A stretch of 63,983 nucleotides of DNA, counting the filler, from Octopus bimaculoides (Eukaryota): the NCBI RefSeq assembly GCF_001194135.2. It is 6 parts of 6 records of this genome, joined end to end, with 100 filler letters (N's around TTAATTAATTAA, not from the genome) between each part and the next. Parts side by side here need not be neighbours in the genome. Positions count along the whole stretch, not along the records: positions 39,871 to 54,011 come from NC_069005.1; 5 more parts are not named here. One strand, written 5' to 3'. The notes under the pieces were generated by a model that worked only from the letters and a program-made list of their open reading frames with translations, was not told where the DNA came from and made no database searches. Positions 32,795 through 54,011 of the stretch are shown here, piece after piece; position 1 is the first letter of the stretch; each line of letters starts with the position of its first letter. The translations under genes were made by a program, and so were the position numbers.

Positions 32795-32916
32795 GAATCT
32801 ATGGTGGTGCCCCACCTGATGTATCAAGCACCATTGAGAGAGACCATTACCAAGACAGATATGTGAAACCTCCAGAGAGACAGTTACCTTCAACACCAGA
32901 TGTTGTTGTCAGTTAA
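32795..32916 (+). CDS. PCDH: Protocadherin copy B, terminal exon 4
   Basis: Phase-1 acceptor; ends PSTPDVVVS* (TAA 32914-32916). Confidence 0.88.
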
Positions 32917-33674
32917 GTGAGACTGAGAAGTTAACACAACAGAAATAATATCACCCTTCAACATTCACACAATATTTAAAACAACACAAATATATTAGTT
33001 AATTATTAAAATTGCCTACATGTGATTGGATATCTGTGTGTGTTTCAGACAATAATTTTACAGCTTCAGATATGAGGAATAAATATATAACTCTGTATTG
33101 TTAGGTTAACCAAAGATAAAGTAATTACTTTAAGAAATTATGAATTGATATTTTTTTTTTGTGAAATACAATTTAAAATTAAAAATATATTAAGCAATAA
33201 ATATGAGATAATTGTATAACACATATTTCAGTTGTAAAATGATTATATTACATTTTAGAAATTATACTTTATTTCACAGCTTTAACTATTCCATTTATAT
33301 TCTGAATTGGAAAGGTAGTTTGAAATTAGGTCAAACACACACTAACTATTATTATCAATATTGTATTTATAATTTACATTACACACACATTACCAACATC
33401 AGCCATATTTTGTTAATACAACCTCTCTGTTCTAAGGATTTCTATGTCAGTCTCTCTCCACATCAGACATGTTGGTGTTATATAGACTTATTATGGCTGA
33501 CTGTTAGTGGAGCTCATAGTACGTCTTCTCTCTCCACCTCTTCCCCTCTGTTCTTTGTGAGGGAAATATAACTTCTAGTTTGAGTGAGGCTGGAGTAAGC
33601 ATCACTCATCTCTCTCTCTCTCTTCCTTTCTCTGTCTCTCACTCACACCCATGCACACACTCACACTAAACATC

Positions 33675-33851
33675 ACACATCCACAAAGGAAGACTGAGAG
33701 GAACTGCTGGTTCCCCACTGACTCACCACCAACACTATTCCATCAACATGAAGCCATTGTCACACCATAGCAGCAGTGACACAGACAACCATTAACAACA
33801 GAACATTGGGACCAAGTCACAGTTTATAACAAAGGATTTTACACAATGAAG
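33675..33851 (+). other. PCDH: Protocadherin copy C 5' leader exon (start approximate)
   Basis: Paralog of 27725-27900; atgaag|gtaagt donor. Confidence 0.7.
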
Positions 33852-34821
33852 GTAAGTTTATTGTTCCTTGTTATTTATCCACTTATGTGACATAATAATT
33901 TAACATATCACCAGGTTGTAGCATCAAAATGTAATATTCTAATGGTAGCCATATTAAATCTGTGTTAGTTTTCATTTAATGTCTTCCTTTCCATCATGGC
34001 TTTCAAGGATTTTGTGAGAAATATTTAAGGTACAGAAAATATGTTCAGCTTTAGTATTTTATAACATTTTTCTTTTCAAGGCATTTGGTATCAGTTTTGA
34101 GCTGTTCATAATATATGTGTTATATTTTAACATTGCACATAATTCCTATTTTATTTAATCACTAACATGTTAAGAATTTTAGATAACAGGTCAGTGCTAT
34201 TCCTGATATTTCACTAATTTCCTGATGTATCGTGGTTGAAATCTATTTAGTAACATTCAATGTGAGTTATTTGCAGTGTTGTGAATGGATAAAGAATATT
34301 GATGTACTTAATGCTATTGACTATTATTCGAATGCATATCCTTTATCTATCATGTATTTTCTTTTGTAACACCAAGTTCCTTTGTGTAATTCTTTATGGT
34401 TAAAACATGGAAAGGTCATGGCTGGAGTACCTTAGATCAAAGTCTGCTATAGTTTAATTTTATTTTGAACTATAAGGAACAATTAAATACAATTCTGTTA
34501 TGATATCATGTGTTTGCTGGTTGTAATAAAAATAAGCATGATATTTAAATAAAAAAAAAAATTATTATTTGTTAAAATCTAATCACTCAACTAAATACTC
34601 CATTTAGCATAATGAAATCTTATTGCGGAAAAAGTTTTTTTCACATTTGATTTAATAGTTAAATTAGACTTGCACAAATGATTGTCATAAATAAAGTTCA
34701 AAGAAAGCAGCAAGCTGCTTGTATAACAAATATGTGTAACAAGTAATTAATGATGTTGTTTTACTGAATTCCTTTTCTTTAAGGAATCATCCTAGATGTT
34801 AATATTTGAACTTGATTTAAG

Positions 34822-35030
34822 TCAGCAAGCTGCCAGAATCGTTAGCATGCCGGGCAAAATGCTTAATGACATTTAAACCCTCCTTATGTTCAAATTCCGC
34901 CAAGGTCGACTTTATCTTCCATCCTTTCAGGGTTGATAAAATAAGTACCAGCTGAGCCCTGGAGTCGATGTAATTGCCTTTCCTTGTCCCTCAAAGTTGC
35001 TGGCCTTGTGCCAAAATTTGAAACCAGTAT
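34822..35030 (+). mobile_element. SINE family 2 copy in PCDH-C intron 1
   Basis: Same head and core as 14632-14835. Confidence 0.75.
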
Positions 35031-35749
35031 TATAACTTGATTTGAGTTAGAGCTTTACTCCTGAAAATAGCATATTGTGTTTTATGTAGAGTTATTGAAC
35101 AGAAAATCTAAATATCAAATGTCGATCAGTATAGAGTAGGAATCTGAATTTGTGAATGGTAATAAACAGAGAGATATTTTATCATGACTGTTTAATATGG
35201 AATATGATATTTGAGAATTTCATCCTTAGTTTTACAATAATACTCAATGGAAGATATCTCACAGCAGTTATGAAATATATCATTCTAGATGGACAAGTTC
35301 TTAGTTGTGATGACAACTTTCATTCCAGCTTTACAGAGTATTATAATATAGGTGCAGGCATGACTGCTTAAGAAGCTCATTTCTCTTGGGTTCCATTGCA
35401 CTGTGCAGGAACTTGGGCAAGTGTTTTCTTCTCTTGCCCCATGTTCATCAATGACTTGTGAGTGAATGTGGTAGGCGGAAACTGCATGGTAACTTGTGTG
35501 TGTGTGTGTTTGTCTGTCCTCCTCGCACTGGTTGACAATTATTGCTGGTCTGCTAAGTCAAAAATTAGTTTTATGGTAGATTCTTCTGGTGTCTCATCAC
35601 GGCCGAAGTCCAATTACTGAAACAGATAATATAGCTTTGTTTTTCTTGAAGCTTCTGTAATTTCTGTGTAATTTGTAGTTTATTCTCAAGGGAGATAACT
35701 CGTTTTGATATTTGACCCTTTCGCATGCAGATTACGCTTATTGATTCAC

Positions 35750-35925
35750 ATTATTTCGAATTAATCATGCATTATTTTGTAGCTTTGAGATTTTTATGAT
35801 ATGTTTGCTTATCAGTTTTCAAGGACGTTGTAGAGTAGGTGTGAGAGGCCAAATTTGGCTGGTTTGAACCTGAAACAAGTAGAATATTTAGGCCAGATAG
35901 GGCTGGTTTGAATGCTAAAGGTTAA
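35750..35925. mobile_element. One end of a piggyBac-like MITE
   Basis: Terminus ...gtttgaatgctaaagg|ttaa (TTAA 35922-35925); partner end not found. Confidence 0.35.
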
Positions 35926-36153
35926 AATAAATGTTTGCCTTACATCCTCCATTAAAATCTGATATTAGTTAATTATTTTAATATCTCACGTCAAAGACGA
36001 CTAATATATATTTGAGCTTAACTTCATATTATTTAGCTGTTATCTTGCTCACTATATAGTTTTTAGAAAAATAAAACAATCAGACATAGTTTACCAAACT
36101 TCATTAATAATTTAACGTTTGTTTCAGATTCGGAATTAAAAGCCATCATAACA

Positions 36154-38596
36154 ATGTCTACTATATTAACATCAGGACCAGAAATGCTGTTCTGTCTGTG
36201 TGTTTTACTGACTTTCTTCCACTGTTATTTAAGTGAAGATATCACATATCATGTTAAAGAAGAGAATATTCCTCATACCTACGTAGGGGACATTGCTACT
36301 GACTTACAGAAATCAGACAGCTCCTTCTTAAAGAATAAGGATTTAATTACATTTAGTCAACTCCAACAAAAGGGAGAACAGTTGTTCAATGTGACGAAAA
36401 CAGGTAAACTGTACACTGTTCAAACATTGGATGCTGAGTCTGTGTGTAGTTATGAGAAAGAATGTTTTGAAATCGTAAAAGTTGCTGTTCACAAATCCAA
36501 GACATTTATGAAGATCTTAAAGATTAAAGTCGTAATAGAAGACATCAATGACCACCAACCTGAATTTCCAACTAAAGAAGTCAACATTCAGTTTTCTGAA
36601 ACGGATGGTAAAGGTACAAAGAGATCGATAGAAAATGCTATAGATAAAGATTTGGGATATCAGAACAGCTTAATTACATATGAATTAAAAGATGATAGAA
36701 GCCACTTTTCATTACTTGTTGTCAAACGTGCAGATGGAATATCATCATTAGAAATTATTTTAGAAAAGAAATTAGACAGAGAAACAAAAGACAGTTACAA
36801 TATTGAGGTCATTGCTAAAGATGGAGGAACTCCACCAAACCAATCTGTTTTAAATGTTAAAATATCTGTTGAAGATGAAAATGACAACAGACCACAATTT
36901 TCTCAAAGCGTTTACAATTTCTCTATTGAGCATAAACATAAAAAGAATATTCCGGTAGTCACATTATCTGCCAGTGATTTAGACATTGGCAGGAATGGTA
37001 AAATATCTTTCTATTTCAGTCCGAAGACTGATATGCAAATGAAGAAATATTTTAATATTGATGAAAACTCTGGAAAAATATTCTTAATAAAATCTTTTGA
37101 GGTTGACACCAAAAATTCTTTAAAATTATATATTGAAGCTAAAGATAATGGAATTCCTCCTCTCAGTTCCATAGCAACCGTTATGGTAAATGTCATCAAC
37201 CAACACAACAATCCCCCAAATATTGATGTGAACTTTATTTCTACACAGAATCACAACACAGCTACCATTCTGGAAGATATCAAAGTTGGTAGTTTCATTG
37301 CTTATGTGATGGTCACTGACAATGATGTTGGACACAATGGAGAGGTGAACTGTCATATCAAAGACGACACATTCAAACTACAGTCAATGGGATCAAAGGA
37401 ATATAAAATAGTTCTAAAGAAAGCAGTAGACAGNNNNNNNNNNNNNNNNNNNNNNNNNNNNNNNNNNNNNNNNNNNNNNNNNNNNNNNNNNNNNNNNNNN
37501 NNNNNNNNNNNNNNNNNNNNNNNNNNNNNNNNNNNNNNNNNNNNNNNNNNNNNNNNNNNNNNNNNNNNNNNNNNNNNNNNNNNNNNNNNNNNNNNNNNNN
37601 NNNNNNNNNNNNNNNNNNNNNNNNNNNNNNNNNNNNNNNNNNNNNNNNNNNNNNNNNNNNNNNNNNNNNNNNNNNNNNNNNNNNNNNNNNNNNNNNNNNN
37701 NNNNNNNNNNNNNNNNNNNNNNNNNNNNNNNNNNNNNNNNNNNNNNNNNNNNNNNNNNNNNNNNNNNNNNNNNNNNNNNNNNNNNNNNNNNNNNNNNNNN
37801 NNNNNNNNNNNNNNNNNNNNNNNNNNNNNNNNNNNNNNNNNNNNNNNNNNNNNNNNNNNNNNNNNNNNNNNNNNNNNNNNNNNNNNNNNNNNNNNNNNNN
37901 NNNNNNNNNNNNNNNNNNNNNNNNNNNNNNNNNNNNNNNNNNNNNNNNNNNNNNNNNNNNNNNNNNNNNNNNNNNNNNNNNNNNNNNNNNNNNNNNNNNN
38001 NNNNNNNNNNNNNNNNNNNNNNNNNNNNNNNNNNNNNNNNNNNNNNNNNNNNNNNNNNNNNNNNNNNNNNNNNNNNNNNNNNNNNNNNNNNNNNNNNNNN
38101 NNNNNNNNNNNNNNNNNNNNNNNNNNNNNNNNNNNNNNNNNNNNNNNNNNNNNNNNNNNNNNNNNNNNNNNNNNNNNNNNNNNNNNNNNNNNNNNNNNNN
38201 NNNNNNNNNNNNNNNNNNNNNNNNNNNNNNNNNNNNNNNNNNNNNNNNNNNNNNNNNNNNNNNNNAAGTGATAACACCATAGATGCCACATTGTTGATTA
38301 TCATTGTAGTAGCAGCTGTGATAGTATCTATAGCTATTGTGGTTTCTATAACACTGTGTATTGTGAGATGTAACAATGTGAGAAATAGCTCCTCTGAAAG
38401 AACAGCAGAAGAGAAACAGGCATACCAATGTCGCAATGAGATGAGACAGTTGATCTATCAAGGTAACAACAGTGTACCTGTGATGTCAGGTAATCGAGGA
38501 GAGACATCAGACAGATATGGTCATTCGAGGAGCCATTACTATCCAGAAGACTGGAAGACATCGACAATGAACAGAAGTCTTCAGAAGTCTACAAAG
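36154..38596 (+). CDS. PCDH: Protocadherin copy C, large exon (start 36154 or 36184; gap over late EC4-EC6)
   Basis: Same architecture as copy B; acceptor gtttcag at 36127; gap 37434-38265; TM and tail at 38270-38596; donor aag|gtaagc. Confidence 0.95.
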
Positions 38597-38933
38597 GTAA
38601 GCTTTTCTTTAATTAACAATTTGTTAGTAAATAATGTGTAATTAATAATTATATGACTGGAAGACATCAACAATGAATAGAACTTTACCAAAAAGCATGA
38701 AGGTGTGTGGTAATATTCTCTGTTGATAATCTTATAATTATTTACAGAATATTGGTTTTAAATGTTAGTTGTATTCTTAGTCTGTAAATTATAAAGTTTG
38801 TTTCTTCACACTTATTTTAAGCCAGTAACATGAATCATGATTGATATTATTATGATATAACGATTGGATTTTGTAAAATTTTATATTTTACTAAAATTGC
38901 AATGAGACATGAAATGATTTGTTTCTCTAACAG

Positions 38934-39087
38934 CAGAAATACAGTCAACCTATAGAGGTAACATCTTATGGAGATAACAGACCATCTTCTAACTATCCCA
39001 CTGACACATTGACCAGTCGTAAGAGTAGTGTACAGTGCTGGAGTGAGCGGTCAAGTAGACAGTATGAAGAAATACCAGCAATGTCAG
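38934..39087 (+). CDS. PCDH: Protocadherin copy C, cytoplasmic exon 3
   Basis: 154 nt with the same splice sites as copy B; one amino-acid difference seen (G/V). Confidence 0.88.
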
Positions 39088-39437
39088 GTAAAACAATTTC
39101 CTCTATCTATAATAATTGGTGCATCTCTCATTTTTCCCAGTGACATTTTTTGGAGTGAATTTTAAAGAAACACTAGGATTTTGAGGACTTCCCAAATCTT
39201 GTTTCTAATTGTTGTATCAATTGATGAAAAAGTTTGGCGAATTATATTTATAACCCAAATACATAAATCCATTTGTATTTTGTAGTTAATTGTTAAAAGG
39301 TATACTCAAGTGCATGTCTAATTATATGATGAGATTAATTCGTTCATCATAGTTGTTTTACAGATCATCAAAGTCATTTAATAATTATTGTCTCTGTGAA
39401 TTCTGTAATAAGTTTATTTGATGTATATGTGTTTCAG

Positions 39438-39556
39438 GAATCTATGGTGCCCTACCTGATGTATCAAGCACCATTGAGAGAGACCATTACCAAGACAGAT
39501 ATGTGAAACCTCCAGAGAGACAGTTACCTTCAACACCAGATGTTGTTGTCAGTTAA
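39438..39556 (+). CDS. PCDH: Protocadherin copy C, terminal exon 4
   Basis: In-frame 3-nt deletion versus copies A and B (GIYGALP vs GIYGGAPP); TAA 39554-39556. Confidence 0.88.
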
Positions 39557-39770
39557 GTGAGACTGAGAAGATGACACAACAGAAATTATATCACCCTTCA
39601 ACATTCACACAACATTTAAAACAACACAAATATATTAGTTAGTTAACAATACTTCCCCACATATGACTGAATAGTTTGTATGTGTTTCAAACAAAGTATT
39701 TGAAATGTGTACATCTGGGGTAGGGTTGTGCAGATAAAACTAATATAACATCAATTATTCTGATTAATCA

Positions 39771-39870
39771 NNNNNNNNNNNNNNNNNNNNNNNNNNNNNN
39801 NNNNNNNNNNNNNNTTAATTAATTAANNNNNNNNNNNNNNNNNNNNNNNNNNNNNNNNNNNNNNNNNNNN
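39771..39870. other. Artificial scaffold linker
   Basis: N44-TTAATTAATTAA-N44. Confidence 0.97.
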
Positions 39871-40180
39871 TAACGTGCAAGTGGCTGAGCACTCCACAGA
39901 CACATGTACCCTTAACGTAGTTCTCGGGGGATATTCAGCGTGACACAGTGTGACAAGGCTGACCCTTTGAATTACAGGCACAACAGAAACAGGAAGTAAG
40001 AGTGAGAGAAAGTTGTGGTGGAAGAGTACAGCAGGGTTCGCCACCATCCCCTGCTGGAGCCTCGTGTAGCCTTAGGTATTTTCGCTCAATAAACATTCAC
40101 AACGCCCGGTCCGGGAATCAAAACCGCGATCCTATGACCGCGAGTCCGCTGCCCTAACCACTGGGCCATTGCGCCTCCAC
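39871..40180 (-). mobile_element. SINE family 3 with well-preserved tRNA-like head
   Basis: Minus strand GGCGCAATGGCCCAGTGGTTAGGGCAGCGGACTCGCGGTCATAGGATCGCGGTTTTGATTCCCGGACC, followed by a body shared with other copies. Confidence 0.85.
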
Positions 40181-42001
40181 GTGTCTGTGTGTACATGCAT
40201 GCATACATACATAATTTATTCATAGCAGTCATGGGGAAATGACAGTGGGCTGACCTATGCAAATTACCTAGGCCATCAATGTGTTCTATTTTTGTATACC
40301 TCTTCAAGATAAGGTTGGACACTTGTCATGCTGATGATGCCTATCGAGGCAGAAACACATGTCCATGATTGTCCTCTTTTCTCCAAACAATAAGCTTGTC
40401 TTTTTCTGTAATGGCATGTCAGCTTTGGAGAATATATGATTCTTGGGATTATCTCATTTTCTCGTATGACATGGATCTCAATTGCCATTTTGGAATTATG
40501 ACATTTTCTAGAGGCAGAAATAATTTTGATAAATCAAGAATTTATGCTGTATGGTATTGAATATAATTTGTCTATGTTGTTTAAAATGTTTAAAATAATA
40601 ACCTGTGTGTGTGTGTGTGTGTGTGTTAGTATGTATAATTATATATACATATATAATATTTTCCTTTTTTTTTTTTTTCTCTTTCACAGCCAGATCACTT
40701 CACCTTCAATGTGCTGCATATCTTCACTGCGTATCACTGCAACCGCGCTTGAACACAAGTCCTCACAACCTCTCTTTAGTAGTTTACTTGATCCTCCTAC
40801 ATCTGTGTTTGCTTCTTAAAAAAAATCAAAACCAAAAAAAAATAGCACAAAGAAAAGATTCATTCCTTCTCATTTCTTCAGACCAACCTTGAGAGTTTAT
40901 AATTTCTAAAGTAATGGTCGGAGTAAATGTAGAATCTATTTATTTATTTATTTATTTAAGTTTTACTTCAATTTCTTCACCAAATCTTGATATTTCTCTT
41001 ACATAGTTGGGAAGGTATATATATATATATATATTTGTATATATATATATATATGTATATGTATGTATGTATAAATACTCACACATACACAAAGATCTGA
41101 TTCCCTCTGTCTTTCTTAAAAAATCTCTTGAGATTGTCTGCATACAATAATTAATTGAATCTCTGTGATAAGAACTTCTTAATTACTTCATTAAGGCAAT
41201 GTTGTGTATACACTTTAATTGTACCAAACCTATGCATTCTAGTCACATACTCCCTCACTTTGTTTTAAACCAAAGAGTAACGCTCTAGTCAATTATTTTG
41301 GTTTTATAAATAAATTCTCCATAGTTTTTACTTCAAGTGCATAAAGTCACTATATAATATTTGAAAACAAAATTCTGCATTTACTTAAAAAACAAAACCC
41401 CCCTTCAAAAACGAAGTATTATTATTAAATACTATTATTAGTAAATATTAAGTGATTTAATATCCTTAAGAAAATCCATATTATAATTTGTCATGTTGAT
41501 ATCCTCTTGAAAATCCAGGACCCTTTTGTCCAATGTAATATCATTGTCATCATTGTAATATCATTGTCTTCCTGAAAAGGAAGGGAGAGAAATGTTTTTT
41601 ATGTTCCCTTTGCAATTTGTAAAATCAAATTTTCCCTAAGATATATTAGCTACACTTTACTTATGTAGTACTCCACTTTTTAGGTGTAATTAGTCTTAGA
41701 CGGGTTAAGTATGGATAATTCAAAATAGCTCAGAATATTCTAATATAGTAATTTGCTTGTGTGTATTTAGAATTGTGGAGATTGAATTGGAAGTCATTTA
41801 ATTAACTGCAAGACTATTTTTACAAAAAAAAAAAGAAGCATCATCATGATAATTAATACTTAAAATATAACGACATACTTTAGATGCTCAACACTAACAA
41901 GGCTGCTGGTCTTAGTTGTAGCATTGTGTCAGATTTTAGGATTTTAGTGAGGCTCTTGTGTTTGGAAAAAGTGTGTTTGTCCGTGTAACTAAGTAGGAGA
42001 T

Positions 42002-45000
42002 ATGCAGATGGCTGAAGATAAGAAGGTGACCGGAAACCATGCAAGTTTGGAGAACTTACAACAAGTTCCACTGTCACAGAAAAGTGTTGAGCAGATCATT
42101 ACGTTTCCTTGGAGTCGTGACCATTCGTTGAGCTGCTACCACGGCTTGGACCAGAATGTCAAACCTGGAGAATATGTCCTTCTCACACTCTTCATGGAGT
42201 TCTGTTCGATTACTGAACACAAAATTGAACAAGTCCTTGCCGAACCACTTAAAAACCATTTTTCTAAATCTCTACAAAGAAATGAGGACCCCCAGTTCGA
42301 CCAGCTGCTTGCCTCCCTCGGCTGTGTGGCTGAACAAGGCCTGCCATCTCTCCTGCATTCCTTTCTTAAATGGTATGAAAAACAGTCCCTTGTTGACAAC
42401 AGTCATCTCCTTGATCGTTACCGTATACGAAATAAAGGAGAGAAAAACTTCTTGTGCGAGCGCCGTGAACTGGCTGTCGATTATGTTTATTGTTTGGTGC
42501 TGATTGAGATTTTACCGAAACTCTCATACCACCCGGGTCATGATGAACTTGTCACATGCATTATCAACCAGGGGTTCCGGCACTTCAAGTACAAAGATGG
42601 TTTACAGGCAAACCCAAATGCTGGCAATATCAAACTGATTTCTAGTCTGTATGCAGAGGTGATCGGTGTTCTGGCTCAGTCTCGGTTCCCACCGATTCAC
42701 AAGACTTTTCTCAATGAACTCAAAGAACTGAAACTCCGTGATCAGACGCCGTTCACGGCACAAAGTGTTATTAGCCTCCTGATGGGCCTGAAGTTTTTCC
42801 GTGTCAAAATGCATCCAATTGAAGATTTTGAAATGTGTGTCCAGTTCCTGCACGAGTTGGGTCAGTATTTTCTCGAAGTGAAAGACCGGGATATCAAACA
42901 TGCCTTAGCCATGTTGCTTGTGGAGATCTTACTGCCCGTTGCTGCCCAAGCTAAAAATGAGGTAAACGTCCCAGTTTTGAAGAATTTCGTCGAGATGCTC
43001 TACTCAACCACCATTGATATGACCACGAAAAAGAAACACACTCTTCATTTATTTCCTCTGGTCACCTGTCTGTTGTGTGTTAGCCACAAACAATTCTTCC
43101 TTAGTAACTGGCCATACTTTCTCACAATGTGTTTGTCTCAGTTAAAGAACAAAGAAGCAAAAATGTCACGGGTTGCTCTCGAATCTCTCTACCGCTTGCT
43201 CTGGGTCTACATGGTGCGGATTAAATGTGAAAGTAATACAGCCACCAGGAGTCGACTTCAAAGCATTGTGAACAGTCTCTTTCCGAAAGGCTCGAAGATG
43301 GTAACACCACGTGACACACCGCTCAATATTTTTGTCAAGATCATTCAGTTTATTGCTAAAGAAAGACTGGATTTTGCCATGAAAGAAATAATTTTTGACT
43401 TACTTTGTGTTGGAAGACCAATCAAATTCTTGACACCAGAAAGAATGAGCATCGGTTTGAGAGCCTTCCTAGTTATTGCCGACAGTCTACAGCAGAAGGA
43501 CGGTGATCCTCCGATGCCTCAGTCTGCAGCAACATTACCTTCTGGCAGTACAGTCCGTATCAAGAGAACATTTTTGAACAAAATGCTGAGTGAGGAGACA
43601 GCCAAGGACATTGGTCTATCATGCTACTATCCTCACATCCTGAAAACCTTTGATTCAATCCTTCGTGCTTTGGATGTGCAAGTAGGTCGTCCATTATTAC
43701 AGACAAATTCTGAAAACACGGGCAAAGAAGTCGACGAACTCATTACCAGTGACCGTAAACCTAAAATTGACTTATTCCGGACATGCATCGCTGCAATTCC
43801 CCGCTTGATACCCGAAAACATGTCAAGCCAAGAACTTGTCGAACTGCTTACTCGTCTGACAGTACACATTGATGATGAATTGAGGGGTTTAGCATTTCAA
43901 GCTTTGCAAAACCTGATGCACGAATCCCAGACTTTCAAAGAACAAGTCATTCGAGGTTTTGTGCAGTTTATTCAGCGTGATGTCAGCGACACAGCATCTC
44001 AGCCACTGGACGGTGTTCTTCGTATGTTAGTGCAGTTGCTAGTCCAGTGGAAGAGCAACCCTGGACAGCAGCAGAGCTTGACCTCGGTACCGGGTCAAGG
44101 AGCTAGTAAACTGGACGGTAGTAACGGTGCTATTGGTCGTGATGCAACAGCTGAACTTGTTGTACTTCACGATGTCGAAGGGTTGGCTCTTGTCATGCTA
44201 TGTAGCATTCAACTTGTCATCCGCAAATTGGCTCTGCTTCTACTCAAGGAGGTGCGCAACATCTTTACTAGTTGCCAACACGGTTCATCGACGACCTGCA
44301 GCAACTGCAATACTTCACAGCAATCTAATCATCATCAACATTATAACCACCACAACATAACTCGCCATCACCAAAACCTCCTCCAACATCATCACCAAAA
44401 CCTCCTCCAACATCATCACCATCACCTCCATCAGCCACAGTTGCAGCAAATAAACAAGTCATACTGCAGTAAAACCTGTTTAATTGACCAGATGGAATGT
44501 ATGTGTCTGCCAGTCATGACTAAAATGCTTGCGATTCTTCCACCAGATGAGAAAGCATCTCTGATTGCCTGTTCCAACATTGATCTGAATTGGATAATCG
44601 ATCGAGCAGCCAGTACCTGGCTGTCTGGTGCCAGTCAGGACAGCCAGGACATGCACCAGCTGATGGTCAACTCCTCGTTTAACCAACCGGACCCCTGGAT
44701 ACATCGTCTTGTTGGACTTATTGCATCTGAGGAATCGTTGAAGAAGTGTAGTCATGCTGTCAACTGTGCATGGATGATCGTCTATACTCGACTGCAAATG
44801 TTGTTTCCTTTGGTTGATGCCAGTTCCCAAACCAACGAATATCGGTCGTCAATACTGCGTTCTGGAAGCAAGAAAGTCACAAATGACTATGATCTCTACT
44901 TACGTCTTTGGCAAAACTATGTGATCCTTGCTTGTTGTTTAGCTCAACAAGGTACAGTTTTACCGTATCATCGGTGTGCTTCTCCGGAACTTGGATTTTC

Positions 45001-48000
45001 CCCAGAAAATTTTCCACCATTGTCTTCCGATAAAACAGAGAATAAACAAACAGCTCAGAGCAGTAACCTCTTCCGTTTGCTTGTGCCGTTGATAAAGTGT
45101 GAAAGTGCTGACATGAGGGATTCCGTTGTTAACGGTTTGGGTTACACCAATCCCACCGTTTTTAAAGAACTCCAAGAAGAACTACTCCCTTACTTAAAGG
45201 AAGCCAATGATAAGAAAGTCGATAACATCAAACAAAGGCGCAAACGCAACAACCTGAGGGTTCAGCTGACTCGATTGTTCAAACTAATGGCTGAAAACGG
45301 GACGTTTGGACTTCACAATTCTGGAGTCATTGATGCTGATAAGAACTGCTTGAATTCCATGTTCCTCGACTACATCGATGGTGCTCGTGTTTATTTAGAA
45401 GGTGAGAATGAAAGAGATTTGCCAAATATTCAAGAAGTGAGATTACATTTTAGTAGTTTCATTCGTTTGTTGATCCAAAACACTCCGTTGAAGCAGAGGA
45501 ACACTCTACTGTCGAAAGAAACACGTCACAGTTTATTCCATCTTCTTGCCATCTGGAGTGGCCACTTCAGTTCATCATTCGTGCATCTCGAGAGGAAGCT
45601 GTCTAAGGAGGAGGTCAGTCCAGAGTTGGAGCTGGCCACTGTCAGAGCCATGTCTTCAGTATTGACCTGCGGTCCAGTTTTCGACCCAAATGGCCTGAAT
45701 GAAGATGGCTATGTTTATACTTGGCTCGACGCTCTGTGGAATTGTCACGAGACTGAGATGCAGGAACAAATTCTGAGCTTGGCCAAAGAGACTGTGATTC
45801 TACTGTTGGACTTCAACCCAGATGTACAATATTTACTGGACTGGGTCATTGACCATTGCTATACTGCTAACATGGAAGTCGCTGACCATTGCTTAAATGC
45901 TTTAGCTGCTGTGTTTCAAACTAAGGAATATTCTTGTGATCTGATTGCCATGTTGAATCTTGTCGTGTTGAACGTTGGCAGCACTCGTGTCGAAACTCAT
46001 GACACAGCGCTTCAGTTACTGAGACTTCTCGACAGTTACTTCTTCCAAGACAAACCTGTCTTTGAAGAATCTACTTTAGACGCATCTCAACAACCAAATA
46101 CTCTCAATGATATTTTGTTGACCGTGAACTATGGTCAGTCTCAAGTAGTCTTGTCTGACCAGTTGGTCAAATTACATCCAGACATGACAATGCCAATGTT
46201 TTCCGAAATCACTCATCGGTTTCAGACTGCACGCCCAGCATTGCGAGAGGTTCTACTCAAATGTCTGTTGCCGTGGTTACACAACATCGAACTCGTTGAC
46301 CCTTCTCTGCCATCTTCTACTGCTATGTCAAGTTTCTTAACCAGTGTACAAGACAGCCAGACCGATAAAGTAACCAAGTCATACCTGGAAGGCGAGGGTT
46401 GGGGGTCTGCTCAGGCCACAGAAATGGTGCTAAATAATCTGCTGTATATTACTGTGAAATTTGGGGATAGTCACCCGACTGAGATTGAACACCTATGGGC
46501 TGCTTTGGTAAAATACTGGGCCAACAATTTAAGGGTAGTCGTACGATATTTAGTTATTGTCACCAATATGTCGCCAACAGTGTTACTGCCCTACGCTAAA
46601 CGTGTTATCAGTTATCTCGGCCGAGCCAAACCAGAGAAGCTTGTCGATGAATTAATGAACGAATTACAAACAGTGGAAACTTTAAATCAGACCATCGAAC
46701 GCACTCAGACTCCACCATTCTATCGGTTGTCATCTTTGAAGAAGTCAGCTACAAACGCCAACACCACAGACGATGAAAAGCTTGGCCGTACACAGGCTCC
46801 AGAGAATTCCCTAGAAAAGGGGGTGCTGCACACAAAGCGGCACAGCACATGTGAAGAGATCACAACTGAAGGCACCCCCTGTACCGATTCCACTACGTTT
46901 CTCTGTAGTATTTCTAGCATGTCCAGCTCTTCTTCAGTCAGCAGCAGTCACGACTTGATGGAAGAGAACTGTGCAAGCCCCACCAATACTCCAGTACCTT
47001 ACCCGCTTCCTATGCCAGCTTACGGCGGATATTTTGCTCCCATGTCTGAACTTCTACCGGATACATTTGTTCCTACCGCTGGATTACATCGCAGCTATCT
47101 TGGTATAATGTTTCTGTCTGATCTTGTGCTTGATGGCCTCGATATAGACTGGACACCTCATCTACCTTTGCTACTGCACATTGTCTTTCTGGGACTTGAC
47201 CATTCTCGAGCGATTGTCTATGAACACTGTAAGAAAATATTTCTCAACTTGTTGCTCTTCCAAGCTTCGGTTCCTGAGCACCAGTACATTGCACGCCTTT
47301 TGATCTCACGAATGCCACGACTGAAGTTGCTGAGTGATAACCGCAAGACTTTTACTGCAGACAGCCCAGCTGTTGAAGAAGATAATTTATTGTGTAATCA
47401 GTTAACTAGCACTACACGGACCACTGCTGACCTCACCAAAGACTCTTCACAACATGACTCAGTGGAAGCAACTGTGGACAGTCTGTTGTGCTTTTTGGCC
47501 AGTAAAACTGGGAAACCACTTTGGAATTACGAAGATATCACACCGAAGACTCTTACAACTATCAGTTCTTCGTCATTGGACTATTTCTTAAAGTTAGTAG
47601 TGAGGGTGTTTGAAGAATTGGTACCCTTGGCCCTTGTTGAACAACGATGGTCACAGATAGCCCTGCAAATGGCATTGTCCTGCTCTTCCAGACATTATGC
47701 CGGTCGTTCCTTCCAGGTCCTACGGGCTCTTCAAGTGCGTCCATCTACACAGATGCTGTCTGATATTCTGTCGAGACTTGTGGAAACGGCAGCCGAACAA
47801 GGCGAAGACATGCAAGGGTATGTAACGGAAATTATGTTGACCCTGATTGCTTCTGTAGACAACCTCGACCTGGAGTTGAGGCCAACTGATATGATGCGGG
47901 AACTATTTTTATCGACACCAAACCTCGCAAAAGAAAGCTCCACTGAAGTTGCTCGTGGTTCTGTAGTTAATGCAAACTCTGGCCCTGCACACACACGTAG

Positions 48001-51000
48001 CACTAGCTACACTGTATCCGTCCTGTCACGCCTGACTGCTTGTGTTGCAGCTGGCATGCCACGTGTGCGTTCGCCATCAGAAGTGCACCGGTCATGTTTA
48101 GCCAAATCTCACAGTGCTCAGTCTCTGAAGAACTTTGACGAAGCCAGCACTGAAGATAAACTAACAATTGTTACTCAGATGTTCTGGATGGCTGTTTCCA
48201 TGTTGGAATCAGACTACGACTACGAATTCCACCTTGCTATCAAACTTCTGGATAAGATTCTGAAACACTTGCAGCCTGAAAGACCTGAATGCCGGGAGAA
48301 GCTTGATAAGATCTTACAACAGATAAAATGGAATAATTTCCCCGGCGTGCAGATTCTTCTGTTAAAAGGTTGCACTTCACATGCATTAGCAGAGCCAACA
48401 TGGCTCCTTTTATCTCAATTGACTCTTTGCATCAATGCTCCAGTGATGGACCCCAGCGGAGCCCTTGGTTTCCCCATTAACGTCATCGCCTTACTGCCTT
48501 ATTTAATACACCACTACGAGAACCCAAGCTCAGAATGTCGTGAGGCTGCTGATCGAATTAGTCAGATGTGTGGTCAGCAGTCTGAGAAACTTCACAATCT
48601 TGCAACTGTAATGTCTCTTTATAGCCGAGGGACATTCAACAAGGACAGTTCGCAGTGGACCAAATGTGTAGTGAAATACTTGCTGGACGTGTATGCGTGC
48701 ACCAGTCTTAGTATGATTACATTCCTTGTTGAAGTTTTGGAACGAGGACCAATTAATTATCAACCAGACATTCTCCAGATTCTTCACTGCATTGTTCATT
48801 ACGTTGATTTCAACACAACATGTAAAAAGGTTTTGAACCAGCAACTGTTCTGCCCCGTATCACGCCATACCAAAGGAATCCACTGGAAAGAAGCTTTAAA
48901 GATTCTCAAACTCGCAGTCACTCGATCGTCTACTCTTGCTGCTGCGTTCCCAAGTGGTGGTGATGCAGGAGGTCCACCTGGAAACCGTTCGTCCTTTGTG
49001 GCAGATACCGGAATCTTCCGTAAGAAGGAGTTACCAGGACTGACGCTAGACTTCACAGTGGACTTGTCCAATCGGGCATTGATTGGTCACAAGTATCTGG
49101 GTATCGATCTGTACCCGAAAGAAGACAACAAGAATGTCAGCCTTCTGTCCGTTAGTCGGAAACATTCTGGTAACCAAGATTATGAGTCATCCTGGAAGAA
49201 GCCAATGATGTCACAGACACGGACACGGGAACGATTGATCAGCCTGCTGAACTATTTCGGACAGCGCATTGGGCTGCCCAAGAGCCCTTCGGTGATATTC
49301 AGCCAGTCCAGTGACCAACAACACAGTGTAACATCCAGTGGTGAAGAGACATCTATTCCAGAAACACCATCAAATGATGCTCTGTTGAGCGATACTAACA
49401 GTAGTGACCTTATGATGACCTTCAAAAGGTTTGATTTTCTTGACAACGAACTGGAGAAAGATGAACAAAACGACGACTATTTCTCATTGGGTGATCGGTG
49501 CCAGTCATTTAATCTTCACAGCTCCGAGATTTCCTCAAAGACCACATTTGGAAGCTCCCCTGAATTGAAACTACAGGACAGTATAGAAGACCTGAAGGGC
49601 ATAATGTCAAGCGATATTAACTGTTTACTTGAAGTGTCAACGTCTGACGAAGAATCGCAAACCCCTGGAGCCGATGATGATGGAATGCCTCGTGACCTTC
49701 CCTCCAGTAATTCATCAGCCATGCTACAAAACGATACATTGATTGAACGAGATACATCTAGCCCTGTTCTAGTGGCCACCTCGTCCAACAGTTCTCCCAG
49801 TGAAATAGATCTTATGGTGCTCAGTTCCAGCACATCCCGTGCACTAAGTCTCGCAAGCCTTGGTGCCATCTATTTCACTATACCTCCTGATGAAGCATGG
49901 CAAACTCATCTGCACCAAGTTCTCACAGATTCCTCCGTATCGTTGACCAGTGCCACTTGCCTTATTTTCCCACGTCTTTATAACGAGCATAAGAAATGCA
50001 TAGCTAACCTGACGCAGGAAGCGTGCTCGTACATAGGCGAACATGACAACTTGCAAGAACTCACCAGCAAATTCATGCATATCCTTGACACACTGTTTTC
50101 CCAGATGGAATGTCCGTATGTGTTTGTCCAACCAGAGTCTCTGTTGGAGAACAGTATTATTGACCGACATAAGTTCTGCGTCCTAGAAATTCAGGAATGT
50201 TTAGAAATGTTAAGCATGCGACTTACTCAAGCCGAACAATGTCTCGAAACAATGAAGTCAATGGCATTTCTTGAGCCTCTAAATGAAGGTGCTGCCTCGG
50301 CCGAAGCGAGGAATTCCAGTATTGATGACCAGAAGGGGGAGATGTGTCGACAGCTCTACAAACTGCTTTTCCAGCTGGTGTTACTCTTTGAAAGTTTCAT
50401 TAAGGTTGTTGATATCTTCCAGAATTTGACCTTGACTGGCCAAGCTTTAGACANNNNNNNNNNNNNNNNNNNNNNNNNNNNNNNNNNNNNNNNNNNNNNN
50501 NNNNNNNNNNNNNNNNNNNNNNNNNNNNNNNNNNNNNNNNNNNNNNNNNNNNNNNNNNNNNNNNNNNNNNNNNNNNNNNNNNNNNNNNNNNNNNNNNNNN
50601 NNNNNNNNNNNNNNNNNNNNNNNNNNNNNNNNNNNNNNNNNNNNNNNNNNNNNNNNNNNNNNNNNNNNNNNNNNNNNNNNNNNNNNNNNNNNNNNNNNNN
50701 NNNNNNNNNNNNNNNNNNNNNNNNNNNNNNNNNNNNNNNNNNNNNNNNNNNNNNNNNNNNNNNNNNNNNNNNNNNNNNNNNNNNNNNNNNNNNNNNNNNN
50801 NNNNNNNNNNNNNNNNNNNNNNNNNNNNNNNNNNNNNNNNNNNNNNNNNNNNNNNNNNNNNNNNNNNNNNNNNNNNNNNNNNNNNNNNNNNNNNNNNNNN
50901 NNNNNNNNNNNNNNNNNNNNNNNNNNNNNNNNNNNNNNNNNNNNNNNNNNNNNNNNNNNNNNNNNNNNNNNNNNNNNNNNNNNNNNNNNNNNNNNNNNNN

Positions 51001-51026
51001 NNNNNNNNNNNNNNNNNNNNNNNNNN
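42002..51026 (+). CDS. fry: Furry (FRY/FRYL, Tao3/Mor2 family) scaffold protein, intronless; 2817 codons open to the gap at 50454, true stop probably inside gap 50454-51026
   Basis: KPGEYVLLTLF, SKSLQRNEDPQFDQLL, LFPKGSK.VTPRD.PLNIFVKIIQFIAKERLDFAM.EII, KPKIDLFRTCIAAIPRL, ALSCSSRHYAGRSFQV, MLESDY.YEF.LA match FRY motifs. Length including the gap is ~3000 aa, as in FRY. Confidence 0.95.
44366..44413 (+). repeat. Perfect 24-nt tandem duplication within a His/Gln-rich insertion in fry
   Basis: catcaccaaaacctcctccaacat x2, encoding HHQNLLQH x2. Confidence 0.92.
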
Positions 51027-52153
51027 AAAAAAAAAAAAAAAACAGAAACAAACTTGAATCCATTTTTACAGGTAAACCAAATGAAACAGTCATAAAAAAA
51101 ATTCATTTTTTATTTAAAAATATATTAACAAAACATTGTTTTTAATTTTAAATTCAATAAAAGATTTTAACATGTGAAAAGAATTTTAAATAATGTAAAA
51201 TAATTAAAAAATCTAAATAAATAACAGATTTTAAAAAAAAGTGAAACTGTTGTGAATCTCAATGAGATGTGGTTTGGGATTGAAACCTGAACCTTTGAGA
51301 CCAAACTGAACTGAATATCTTTTTACCTTTTGACTCTGAACAACTGCTGCTTAATGCATTTATTGAAGATAAAAATTTTACCAAAATGATTTATCATCAC
51401 CATGTTTTCAACAGTTTTATGTGTTTATACTTTTTCATCATCATCATTATCATATTCATTGATTTACATTCATTTTCCATATTGGTATGGCTTGGACAAT
51501 CATGTCTGCTCTCCTGGATGGGTCAAGGGACTACCTCTCATCCATGGGTTTTATTTTTGGTTTGGTTTCTTCAGCTGGGTATATACTTCCTAGTGCCGTC
51601 CACTTTACACAGGAGTACTGGGTGCATTTCTTTTTGTGGCACTAACACTAGGAAGATTATTGTCTCTTCAATAAGCCTAAAGCTTCTTGCAACCCTACAC
51701 TTAGCAGAGTAGACTGGGCACATTTTCTGTGGCATCAGCATGAGAAAGGCTAGGAGTGAGAGAACGATGGATAGCACGAGGTAAGAGTGAGTGATGGCAG
51801 TCAATATCAAATGACAAGTTGAGTAAGTAGAGTTTGTGAGGCATGTTCATGTCTAATGAGATCCCTTAAGTATATTCCTCAAGATGGTGAGAGAGTTAAT
51901 GGAATAAGGACTAGGCTCAAAGTTCTGGTTACTTCCGACTGATGGGACACATGTCCCAGAATACTGTGCACCAGTGAGTTGAGTGTAATGAACACACTAT
52001 CATTGCAGAAGGGAGAAGTTATTCTCCTGTGACATACACTACAGTGAACAGCATATTTTGTGTCTGAACCTGTCTAGATGTGTTAAGAAGAAATACACTA
52101 ATAATTGTTCCAGATCTTAATATACACAATGTAAATAACAATTTTCATATATA

Positions 52154-52445
52154 GGTGCAGGAGTGGCTGTATGGTAAGTAGCTTGCTTACCAACCACATG
52201 GTTCTGGGTTCAGTCCCACTGCGTGGCACCTTGGGCAAGTGTCTTCTACTATAGCCTCAGGCCGACCAGAGCCTTGTGAGTGGATTTGGTAGAAGCCCAT
52301 CATATATATGTATGTGTGTATATGTTTGTGTGTCTGTGTTTGTCCCCCCCAACTTCGCTTGACAACCGGTGCTGGTGTGTTTATGTCCCCGTAACTTAGT
52401 GGTTCGGCAAAAGAGACCGATAGAATAAGTACTAGGCTTACAAAG
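52154..52445 (+). mobile_element. tRNA-derived SINE, family 1
   Basis: ggtgcaggagtggctgtatggtaagtagc...ggttcagtcccactgcgtggcacc; A and B boxes. Confidence 0.88.
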
Positions 52446-52997
52446 NNNNNNNNNNNNNNNNNNNNNNNNNNNNNNNNNNNNNNNNNNNNNNNNNNNNNNN
52501 NNNNNNNNNNNNNNNNNNNNNNNNNNNNNNNNNNNNNNNNNNNNNNNNNNNNNNNNNNNNNNNNNNNNNNNNNNNNNNNNNNNNNNNNNNNNNNNNNNNN
52601 NNNNNNNNNNNNNNNNNNNNNNNNNNNNNNNNNNNNNNNNNNNNNNNNNNNNNNNNNNNNNNNNNNNNNNNNNNNNNNNNNNNNNNNNNNNNNNNNNNNN
52701 NNNNNNNNNNNNNNNNNNNNNNNNNNNNNNNNNNNNNNNNNTATTTATATTCCTGCAAAACCAATGTGGGATATAGAATATGGAATATACAATATATAAT
52801 ATAAAATAAAAATGGATGGTACAATGAAATAAAATATTGAATGTCTTATTGAATATGAAATATTGAGTGTTCAATATAAAGGATTAAATATATAAAGGCG
52901 AATATGTATTTTCTATACCTTGTGGTATTTCATCATGGCCCGTATGACAGACTTTAACAGACTGTTATATATATATATATATATACTCACACATACT

Positions 52998-53230
52998 CAT
53001 CATCATCATCATTTAACGACTGTTGTCCATGCTGGCATGGGTCGGACGGTTTGAGCTGGCAAGATAGAGAGCTGCACCAGACTCCAGTCTGGTTTGGCAA
53101 GCTTTTTACAGCTGGATGCTCTTCCTAATGCCAACCACTTTACAGAGTGTGTTGGGTGCTTTTACATGGCGTCACACATGCACTTTTATGTGGGGCAGCA
53201 TGGGCACTTTTATGTGGCACCGCCATGAGT
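52998..53230 (-). mobile_element. RTE-tailed repeat with (ATG)n tail
   Basis: catcatcatcatttaacgactgttgtccatgctggcatggg; homologous to 22840-22920. Confidence 0.7.
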
Positions 53231-53239
53231 GCTTTACAC

Positions 53240-53880
53240 CATCAGAGGGACCAGACTTAATACTTCTGCTGTAGAGTATGGGCCTTTTTGAGTACAGCAA
53301 GGTGCCACACATCTTAGTCCTTTGTCATCTCGCCTGAAAGGTTCAACGTCCTGTAAATTGTTTTTCAGTACTTTATCCCATGTCTTTCTGGGTTTCCCAC
53401 TTCCATGTGTTCTATCTACTTTGAGAGACTGGTACTTCTTTATGGAGCTATTAGCATCCATCCGCATCACATGACCGAACCAGCACAGTCTTCTCTCCTG
53501 CACACAACAACTAATTCCTCTTATGCTTAACTTCTCTATCAAAACACTAGCACTCTGTCAAACATGTACACTTACATTACACATCTAGAGGAGTATACTA
53601 GCCTCATTCCTTTCTAACCGTTACATGTCCTCTGCATTCAGGGCCCATGTCTCACTACCATGTAGAAGTGCTGTCCATATACATGCATCATACAATCTTT
53701 CTTTCGTTTAAAGAAAGAAACATTTTGTGACCAATAGAAGCAACTGCTCTTTGAATTCCTTCCATCTTATCCTTATTCTTGCACTCTCTGTGCATCCTCT
53801 TCCACTACTAATTTGGTTCCTTAGGTAGCAGAAATTATTTACGACTTCTAATGAGCCACCAGGGCGTTTGAATCAATTTC
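53240..53880 (-). mobile_element. RTE LINE 3' fragment
   Basis: KLSIRGISCCVQERRLCWFGHVMRMD....K.......G.GKPRKTW; homologous to ~10760-11300. Confidence 0.85.
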
Positions 53881-54011
53881 CTGAGTCTCTGAGGTTTTTT
53901 TGGATTCTGTGCATCTTTCACAAACAAAAACGACCTTATCTACCTTCACACACATGCATACACGCATATACATACATATAATATAATGTATGTATATATA
54001 TATATATATAT

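What the first reader, a model, noticed from the sequence alone, without database searches (positions are those of the whole stretch)
42002..51042. A ~9-kb intronless Furry gene: probable giant functional retrogene
Seen: 2817 uninterrupted codons with no intron or stop, higher GC than the flanks, and an A16 run right after the terminal gap followed by AT-rich sequence with AATAAA. Established: animal fry/FRYL genes are typically split into dozens of exons; Furry scaffolds NDR kinases in neurite tiling and self-avoidance-type morphogenesis. Inference: whole-mRNA retroposition (or complete intron loss) of an unusually long transcript, retained by selection. Abundant RTE/Penelope machinery offers a route. 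Its position next to the protocadherins crosses a linker and cannot be trusted.
Basis: partly seen in the sequence, partly recalled or inferred. Interest (0 to 1): 0.75.

Follow-up and report, generated by a model that had tools for sequence, protein, structure and literature searches.

The report
Ancient intronless Furry retrogene of coleoids
This is a real, single-exon, about 9-kb copy of the cell-shape scaffold gene Furry that arose from a spliced mRNA before octopuses and cuttlefish diverged, has been kept under strong selection alongside its roughly 59-exon parent, and is unusually large for a retrogene.

Summary
An ATG-initiated ORF of 2817 codons (42002-50453, +) encodes a full-architecture Furry protein and runs into the assembly gap. 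Alignment with O. vulgaris and O. sinensis shows the gap hides about 497 nt: the last 146 codons, the stop and 57 nt of flank. The apparent ORF continuing to 51145 is an artefact of the N run.

The same gene is a single uninterrupted exon in O. vulgaris, O. sinensis, Argonauta hians, Sepia pharaonis and one further decapodiform genomic contig. It is therefore neither a cDNA contaminant nor recent.

Octopods and cuttlefish also keep a second Furry paralog. In Argonauta it has about 59 coding exons over 67.5 kb, and its intron positions match those of oyster fry. The two paralogs form sister clades within cephalopods, each containing both octopus and cuttlefish.

dN/dS for the intronless copy is 0.02-0.04. 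In octopods it evolves more slowly than the intron-bearing copy. Cuttlefish mRNA contigs show it is transcribed, with a recruited non-coding 5' exon 27 kb upstream.

The A16 run, the AATAAA motifs and target-site duplications give no evidence, as expected for an event this old.

Verdict: an ancient functional retrogene, a new member of a known kind, and notable for its size.

The parts
42002..50453 (+). Single-exon CDS of the intronless Furry paralog ('Fry-A'): codons 1-2817 plus the first base of codon 2818. Pfam domains MOR2-PAG1_N, MOR2-PAG1_mid, MOR2-PAG1_C and Fry_C (Fry_C truncated by the gap).
   Evidence: It is 99.2% identical in protein to O. vulgaris/O. sinensis and 94% to Argonauta, with no interruption in any of them.
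41990..41992 (+). In-frame TAA four codons upstream of the start ATG. The start (MQMAE.. / MQETD..) is conserved in Argonauta and Sepia.
44315..44449 (+). His/Gln-rich low-complexity insert (aa 772-816). It is specific to the intronless clade: present at variable length in Octopus, Argonauta and Sepia A, and absent from paralog B and other molluscs.
50454..51026 (.). Assembly gap (573 N). By homology it hides about 497 nt: 2 nt completing codon 2818, 145 further codons, the stop codon and 57 nt of 3' flank. The predicted full protein is about 2963 aa.
   Evidence: O. vulgaris L008 18432-18928; the Argonauta ORF continues 146 codons to TAG
51027..51042 (+). A16 run at the gap edge, about 58 nt past the inferred stop. 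It is orthologous to an interrupted A/C-rich tract in O. vulgaris. It cannot be shown to be a poly(A) relic and may be where the assembly broke.
51027..51924 (+). 3' flank, probably 3' UTR in part. It is collinear with O. vulgaris/O. sinensis at 90-98% identity and carries AATAAA at 51156 and 51216 (chance-level count).
40689..42001 (+). Putative 5' UTR portion of the CDS-bearing exon. The candidate splice acceptor at 40689 has a 19/19 pyrimidine tract followed by ACAG, and the next 100 nt are 99% identical to O. vulgaris. This is inference only, by analogy with the proven 5' UTR intron in Sepia.
   Evidence: window; Sepia

Best explanation
The window carries the coleoid-cephalopod intronless paralog of Furry (called Fry-A here). 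A full-length, fully spliced mRNA of more than 9 kb from the ancestral, roughly 59-exon fry gene was reverse-transcribed and inserted at an unlinked locus. This happened in the cephalopod lineage after it separated from gastropods and bivalves and before the Octopodiformes-Decapodiformes split. The copy acquired a promoter and, at least in cuttlefish, a non-coding 5' exon spliced across a 27-kb intron onto the single coding exon. It has since been kept as a functional Furry scaffold protein under strong purifying selection, next to the intron-bearing parent (Fry-B).

Shown: the intronless state in six assemblies; the multi-exon paralog; ancestral intron positions; sister-clade phylogeny; low dN/dS; transcription and 5'-UTR splicing in Sepia.

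Inferred: reverse transcription as the mechanism; the unlinked insertion being the derived locus; transcription and a 5'-UTR intron in Octopus; an NDR-kinase scaffold function.
For: Identity. All four Furry Pfam domains are present, and they are complete in the O. vulgaris ortholog.

Intronless in genomic DNA.
- O. vulgaris and O. sinensis: 8871 nt for 2956 aa plus stop.
- Argonauta: an uninterrupted 3016-codon ORF.
- Sepia pharaonis: one tblastn HSP covering residues 1-3001, in an intact ORF of 3009 codons.
- A second decapodiform contig, L007.
- The window's flanks are collinear with O. vulgaris on both sides.

Parent copy.
- Argonauta paralog B has about 59 coding exons over 67.5 kb on a different contig.
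- The O. sinensis B protein sits on a 59-Mb chromosome, whereas A sits on a 29-Mb one.
- Oyster fry spans 38.9 kb with at least 41 exons. 27 of its 40 intron positions coincide with B introns (6.1 expected by chance, maximum 14 in 1000 trials).

Phylogeny.
- In the NJ tree, the A clade (window, Argonauta, Sepia), the B clade (O. sinensis, Argonauta, Sepia) and A+B each have 100% bootstrap.
- The Sepia identity of the Logan sequences comes from cluster membership.
- Quartet site patterns are 7:2:1 in favour of A+B, and A and B share 5 indels.

Selection and rates.
- dN/dS is 0.021 (NG86) and 0.038 (YN00) against O. vulgaris.
- Against Argonauta, dN is 0.036 with dS saturated.
- In octopods, A has fewer unique changes than B (223 vs 352, p=7.5e-8).

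Expression. Three independent Sepia Logan contigs are spliced relative to the genome. Nucleotides 1-613 map to L006 4421-5025 and the rest to 32336-42158, across a GTAAGT...TTGCAG intron.
Against: - No poly(A) relic or target-site duplication can be shown.
- Synteny could not be tested. No genes are called within 10 kb of Argonauta B, and oyster flanks give no tblastx hits against cephalopod flanks. It is therefore not proven that A, rather than B, sits at the derived locus.
- A is as similar to Haliotis (0.64) as it is to B (0.59-0.64). A+B monophyly rests on NJ and on few strict site patterns. No ML or site-heterogeneous analysis was run.
- No octopus transcript was recovered, so expression in the window's own lineage is inferred from selection and from Sepia.
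- Paralog B was not seen in the window's own genome, only in the congener O. sinensis and in Argonauta and Sepia.
Confidence: 0.85

Rival explanations
1. DNA-level duplication of fry in the cephalopod stem, followed by wholesale loss of all coding introns in one copy through homologous recombination with a full-length cDNA (in-situ RT-mediated intron loss), rather than insertion of a retrocopy at a new site. The 5'-UTR intron seen in Sepia would then be a retained parental intron.
For: RT-mediated intron loss spares 5'-most introns (established knowledge), and Sepia A does keep an intron in its 5' UTR. No poly(A) or TSD was found. Synteny is unresolved.
Against: It needs two rare events, one of them a single conversion tract covering about 58 introns over more than 9 kb of cDNA. 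A and B lie on different chromosomes or scaffolds in O. sinensis, Argonauta and Sepia. The A and B 5' UTRs share no similarity, though that is expected after this much time. Recruitment of upstream non-coding exons is a common fate of true retrogenes (PMC5803294 describes co-option of regulatory elements by a retrogene).
Confidence: 0.1
2. Artefact: a cDNA-derived or contaminant contig, or a mis-joined assembly, rather than a genomic gene.
For: The locus contains two assembly gaps, and the CDS end is unread in this window.
Against: The same single-exon gene with collinear non-coding flanks is present in chromosome-scale assemblies of O. vulgaris and O. sinensis. It is also in multi-Mb scaffolds of Argonauta and Sepia pharaonis. 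The window's flanks carry species-typical repeats also found around the O. vulgaris locus.
Confidence: 0.01
3. The intronless form is the ancestral state of cephalopod (or molluscan) fry, and the multi-exon paralog gained its introns secondarily.
For: None beyond the fact that A is the slower-evolving copy in octopods.
Against: B's intron positions coincide with those of oyster fry far above chance (27 of 40 vs 6.1 expected). Oyster fry is itself multi-exon.
Confidence: 0.01
4. A decaying or non-functional processed pseudogene whose long ORF merely survives.
For: The C-terminus and stop codon are unread in this window.
Against: ORFs of 2956 to 3016 codons are intact in four other species that span the octopus-cuttlefish divergence. 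dN/dS is 0.02-0.04. A spliced mRNA exists in Sepia. All domains are retained.
Confidence: 0.01

Closest known systems
Furry / FRY / FRYL (Drosophila fry, human FRY and FRYL, yeast Tao3/Pag1/Mor2)
   Same: Same four-domain architecture (MOR2-PAG1_N, mid, C and Fry_C) and a length of about 3000 aa. Trimmed identity to gastropod and bivalve Furry is 60-64%.
   Different: The whole CDS is a single exon. The cephalopod parent paralog has about 59 coding exons and oyster fry at least 41. It also carries a clade-specific His/Gln-rich insert. Vertebrate FRY/FRYL are attributed to whole-genome (DNA-level) duplication (own knowledge), whereas this pair is RNA-mediated.
Classical functional retrogenes that coexist with an intron-bearing parent (e.g. 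human TAF1L from TAF1, PGK2 from PGK1; own knowledge, not tested here)
   Same: Intronless copy of a multi-exon gene at an unlinked locus, with an intact ORF, purifying selection and its own transcription.
   Different: Size: a CDS of about 8.9-9.05 kb and an mRNA of at least 10.4 kb, against about 5.5 kb for TAF1L (own knowledge). Age: it predates the octopus-cuttlefish split. In octopods the retrocopy evolves more slowly than the parent, which is the reverse of the usual pattern.
Amphioxus SYCP1 retrogene replacement (PMC5803294)
   Same: A single-exon retrogene of a multi-exon gene that became functional by co-opting regulatory elements at its new site (abstract of PMC5803294). Here, the Sepia transcripts show a recruited upstream non-coding exon.
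   Different: In amphioxus the parent was lost (replacement). Here the parent persists in octopods and cuttlefish.

Membership tests
Furry (Fry/MOR2/PAG1/Tao3) protein family | MOR2-PAG1_N, MOR2-PAG1_mid and MOR2-PAG1_C domains in order in a protein of about 3000 aa | tested here: met
   E-values 4.5e-156, 2e-39 and 4.9e-65, all far above the gathering cut-offs
Furry (Fry/MOR2/PAG1/Tao3) protein family | Metazoan Fry_C C-terminal domain | tested here: met
   Fry_C E=4.1e-56, cut at profile position 534 of 696 by the gap. The O. vulgaris ortholog reaches position 667 of 696.
Furry (Fry/MOR2/PAG1/Tao3) protein family | Binds and activates NDR/Tricornered kinase with MOB | not testable with these tools
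   Needs a biochemical or genetic assay
Functional retrogene (processed retrocopy) | Lacks all coding introns of the parental gene | tested here: met
   Single uninterrupted ORF here and in five other assemblies. The parent has about 58 introns. No A-specific insert is longer than 10 aligned columns apart from the low-complexity tract.
Functional retrogene (processed retrocopy) | Intron-bearing parental paralog exists, with ancestral intron positions | tested here: met
   Argonauta B; O. sinensis and Sepia B proteins; 27 of 40 oyster intron positions shared. Not tested in the window's own genome.
Functional retrogene (processed retrocopy) | Located at a locus unlinked to the parent | tested here: met
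   Different contigs or chromosomes in Argonauta (BAAFZT010000066 vs 034), O. sinensis (28.9-Mb vs 59.4-Mb records) and Sepia (2.96-Mb vs 0.95-Mb scaffolds). Which of the two loci is ancestral was not resolved.
Functional retrogene (processed retrocopy) | Poly(A) tail remnant at the 3' end | tested here: inconclusive
   A16 lies about 58 nt past the inferred stop, but it is an interrupted A/C tract in O. vulgaris and is absent in Argonauta and Sepia. Decay is expected at this age.
Functional retrogene (processed retrocopy) | Flanking target-site duplications | tested here: not met
   No shared word of 12 nt or more between 40500-42001 and 51027-51500. The UTRs cannot be aligned between genera, so the boundaries are unknown and TSDs are expected to be erased.
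Functional retrogene (processed retrocopy) | Intact ORF under purifying selection | tested here: met
   dN/dS 0.021-0.038; intact ORFs in Octopus, Argonauta and Sepia
Functional retrogene (processed retrocopy) | Transcribed | tested here: met
   Met in Sepia: three contigs from different runs are spliced across a 27.3-kb GT-AG intron in the 5' UTR. Not tested in Octopus, where no transcript fragments were recovered.

The most novel reading that the evidence does not exclude
Fry-A is one of the longest functional retrogenes in any animal (about 9-kb CDS, mRNA of at least 10.4 kb, copied full-length). Since the coleoid ancestor, the retrocopy rather than the intron-bearing parent has carried the conserved core Furry function. 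The parent is free to diverge, markedly so in octopods. This would be a retrogene replacement arrested half-way, in a gene that controls neurite tiling and cell morphogenesis in other animals.
Probability: 0.35. Interest if true: 0.65.

Novelty: new member of a known kind. Interest (0 to 1): 0.5.

Why it matters
Retrogenes are usually short, because reverse transcription rarely completes long templates, and they usually evolve faster than their parents. This full-length 9-kb retrocopy has been kept for the whole history of coleoids. It evolves no faster than its parent, and in octopods more slowly. That extends the size range of functional retroposition.

It also gives coleoids two Furry genes, where gastropods and bivalves appeared as a single Furry clade in the tree made here. 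Furry scaffolds NDR kinases in dendritic tiling and polarised growth in flies and vertebrates (own knowledge). A coleoid-specific duplicate is therefore a concrete candidate for work on cephalopod neural and morphological innovation.

Practically, the result flags annotation errors: the truncated 'partial' models in O. bimaculoides and Argonauta, and a spurious 43-kb model in S. pharaonis.

Tried and rejected
- Poly(A)/AATAAA as evidence of retroposition: rejected. The AATAAA count is at chance, and the A16 is not conserved as a homopolymer.
- TSD search across the flanks: nothing of 12 nt or more. The repeat finder treats each region separately and returned only microsatellites.
- Synteny, to decide which paralog sits at the ancestral locus: no called neighbours within 10 kb of Argonauta B, and no tblastx hits between oyster flanks and cephalopod flanks.
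- Octopus transcript evidence and Nautilus dating through an N-terminal protein search: no octopus fragments. The best fragment, P0149, is equidistant from A, B, gastropods and bivalves and could not be placed.
- Alignment of 5' UTRs among Octopus, Argonauta, Sepia A and Sepia B: microsatellite matches only.
- dS against Argonauta or Sepia: saturated, so the closer O. vulgaris/O. sinensis pair was used instead.
- Gene-structure look-ups for O. sinensis B (P0019) and Haliotis (P0004): not on record. Argonauta B and Saccostrea were used instead.
- Literature searches for a cephalopod furry retrogene, cephalopod retrocopies or record-size retrogenes: nothing relevant.
- ARAGORN on the flanking SINE-like repeats: no tRNA call.
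Full report
**Observation.** Within the piece 39871-54011 there is one very long ORF on the + strand. It starts at ATG 42002 and runs for 2817 codons plus one base to 50453, where the assembly gap begins. An in-frame TAA lies 12 nt upstream of the ATG. From the ORF's own base composition, the chance of 2817 stop-free codons is about 1e-67. GC is 0.42-0.49 in the ORF against 0.26-0.32 upstream. The A16 run (51027-51042) and two AATAAA motifs (51156, 51216) are present.

**The gap.** The ORF listed as 42002..51145 (3047 aa) is an artefact of reading through N.
- Window 40503-50453 aligns collinearly to O. vulgaris L008 8532-18431 at 95.3%.
- Window 51027-51924 aligns to L008 18929-19863 at 90.4%.
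- The 573 N therefore replace about 497 nt. These are 2 nt completing codon 2818 (ATG), 145 further codons, the stop, and 57 nt of flank.
- In Argonauta the ORF likewise continues for 146 codons after '...LTGQALD' to a TAG.

The left edge is in frame with a continuing CDS. The right edge is already non-coding. The expected full protein is about 2963 aa.

**Identity.** The protein has the complete Furry architecture: MOR2-PAG1_N (E=4.5e-156), MOR2-PAG1_mid, MOR2-PAG1_C and Fry_C. Fry_C is cut at profile position 534 of 696 by the gap. The O. vulgaris ortholog carries Fry_C to position 667.

**The intronless state is genomic and old.** Gene spans and ORFs show the same single-exon gene in five other assemblies:
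- O. vulgaris OX597838 and O. sinensis CM016883: 8871 nt for 2956 aa plus stop.
- Argonauta hians: an uninterrupted 3016-codon ORF, L001 10001-19051.
- Sepia (Acanthosepion) pharaonis: residues 1-3001 of the cuttlefish protein align as one HSP, L006 32904-41930, inside an intact ORF of 3009 codons.
- A further decapodiform genomic contig, L007: one block, with a single frameshift near the C-terminus that is probably a long-read error.

This excludes a cDNA contaminant.

**The parent.** Database hits reveal a second cephalopod Furry only 49-51% identical by BLASTP (0.59-0.64 on trimmed columns). It is found in O. sinensis (P0019), Argonauta (P0029) and cuttlefish (the P0006 cluster, which contains S. 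pharaonis CAE1167133).
- In Argonauta it has about 59 coding exons over 67.5 kb, on a different contig from the intronless copy.
- Fry of the oyster Saccostrea spans 38.9 kb with at least 41 exons.
- 27 of the oyster's 40 intron positions coincide with introns of the Argonauta paralog. Chance gives 6.1, with a maximum of 14 in 1000 trials.

The ancestral gene was therefore intron-rich. Copy B kept that structure and copy A lacks every coding intron.

**Dating.**
- An NJ tree (2704 columns, 100 bootstraps) gives 100% support to clade A (window, Argonauta, Sepia), to clade B (O. sinensis, Argonauta, Sepia) and to A+B as a cephalopod clade. That clade is sister to gastropods plus bivalves.
- A is as similar to Haliotis as to B in raw identity, so I checked for long-branch attraction. 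Strict site patterns are 7 (AB|MO): 2: 1, and A and B share five indels. This is consistent with the tree but based on few characters.
- The duplication thus postdates the split from other molluscan classes and predates the Octopodiformes-Decapodiformes divergence, roughly 270-300 Myr by published clocks (own knowledge).
- Nautilus could not be assessed.

**Selection and rates.**
- Against O. vulgaris: dN=0.0035, dS=0.170, omega=0.021 (NG86); omega=0.038 (YN00). Protein identity is 99.2%.
- Against Argonauta: protein identity 94%, dN=0.036, synonymous sites saturated.
- Tajima relative-rate tests show that in octopods the intron-bearing copy has more lineage-specific changes than the retrocopy. 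The counts are 352 vs 223 (p=7.5e-8) for Octopus and 399 vs 247 (p=2e-9) for Argonauta. In Sepia the two are similar, 309 vs 272 (p=0.12).
- On the stems before the octopus-cuttlefish split, A fixed more changes at otherwise conserved sites than B (28 vs 12). This hints at early acceleration followed by constraint.
- A carries a clade-specific His/Gln-rich insert of variable length (window 44315-44449).

**Expression and gene structure.** Ten Logan contigs encode the cuttlefish A protein. Three of them, from different runs, are spliced relative to the S. pharaonis genome. Their first 559-617 nt map to L006 about 4416-5025, and the rest maps to 32336-42158. The junction is canonical: aatt|GTAAGT ... 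TTTTGCAG|gaggcc. Exon 1 has stops in all frames.

So the gene is transcribed. Its mRNA is at least 10.4 kb. It has a non-coding 5' exon 27.3 kb upstream of the exon that holds 568 nt of 5' UTR and the whole CDS.

In the window, a strong candidate acceptor lies at 40689, with a 19/19 pyrimidine tract followed by ACAG. The next 100 nt are 99% identical to O. vulgaris. This is inference only: no octopus transcript was recovered, and the UTRs do not align between genera.

**Retroposition hallmarks.**
- No TSD was found.
- The AATAAA count is at chance (2 observed, 1.75 expected).
- The A16 corresponds to an interrupted A/C-rich tract in O. vulgaris. It has no counterpart after the stop in Argonauta or Sepia. 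It also sits at a gap edge, where assemblies tend to break.

After this much time these marks are expected to be lost.

**Rivals.**
- A cDNA or assembly artefact, a pseudogene, and 'intronless is ancestral' are each refuted.
- The only live rival is DNA duplication followed by replacement of one copy's coding region by a full-length cDNA, with the 5'-UTR intron retained from the parent. It needs two rare events. The copies are on different chromosomes or scaffolds in three species. However, synteny could not be tested, so I leave it at about 0.1.

**Comparison and novelty.** The protein is a bona fide Furry family member. The gene is a functional retrogene in the classical sense, with two of the seven listed defining features (poly(A), TSD) not demonstrable. 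NCBI already lists the protein as 'protein furry-like'. I found no paper describing its retrogene nature or a coleoid Furry duplication.

What is unusual is the size (a CDS of about 8.9-9.05 kb copied full-length), the age, and the fact that the retrocopy is the more conservative copy in octopods. I rate it a new member of a known kind with moderate interest.

**Limits.**
- NJ only; no ML phylogeny.
- No synteny.
- No octopus expression data.
- Paralog B was not examined in the window's own genome.
- The species of the Logan and ENA contigs is inferred from cluster membership with S. pharaonis proteins.

Noticed in passing
window 39871-40180 and 52147-52445: SINE-like repeats flank the locus. 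Each has several copies at 75-92% identity around the O. vulgaris and O. sinensis loci. ARAGORN calls no tRNA in them.
   Followed up: partly
window 52447-52742: A second assembly gap, directly after the SINE-like repeat. ORFs listed across it (e.g. 52257..52874, minus strand) are artefacts of N.
   Followed up: no
window 52966-53170 and 53234-53900 (-): Dispersed repeat with multiple copies in the O. vulgaris locus. There is also a 102-aa minus-strand ORF (..RRLCWFGHVMRMD..GKPRKTWDKVLKNNL..) that resembles the C-terminal tail of LINE ORF2 proteins (own recollection). It has no Pfam hit.
   Followed up: partly
L001 10001-19051 (Argonauta hians BAAFZT010000066): The deposited protein 'furry-like isoform X4, partial' (2871 aa) stops at exactly the residue where the window's gap begins. 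The genomic ORF continues to 3016 aa and a TAG. The annotation looks transferred from the gapped octopus model.
   Followed up: yes
L006 5001-48145 (Sepia pharaonis CAHIKZ030002236): The deposited gene model CAE1283514 spans 43 kb. It replaces the first 16 and last 13 residues with other exons, although an intact single-exon ORF of 3009 codons lies at 32904-41933. The model's first exon coincides with the real non-coding exon 1 seen in the transcripts.
   Followed up: yes
L007 about 18792 (ENA ERZ21867824 ctg89233l): A single frameshift near the C-terminus of the otherwise intact intronless gene in a second decapodiform contig. It is probably a long-read consensus error. The species was not identified.
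   Followed up: no
P0149 (Logan, 590 aa, contig 1850 nt): An N-terminal Furry fragment that is about 0.77 identical to cephalopod A, cephalopod B, gastropods and bivalves alike. It comes from an unplaced, slowly evolving lineage that could matter for dating the duplication.
   Followed up: partly
L008 23779-28871 and L009 23336-28871: In O. vulgaris and O. sinensis the next called gene begins about 5 kb downstream of the Furry stop and has a Cir_N domain (PF10197). It could anchor a future synteny comparison.
   Followed up: no
window 40598-40660 and 41015-41090: (TG)n and (TA)n microsatellites lie upstream of the ORF. They dominate every cross-species match of the upstream region.
   Followed up: no
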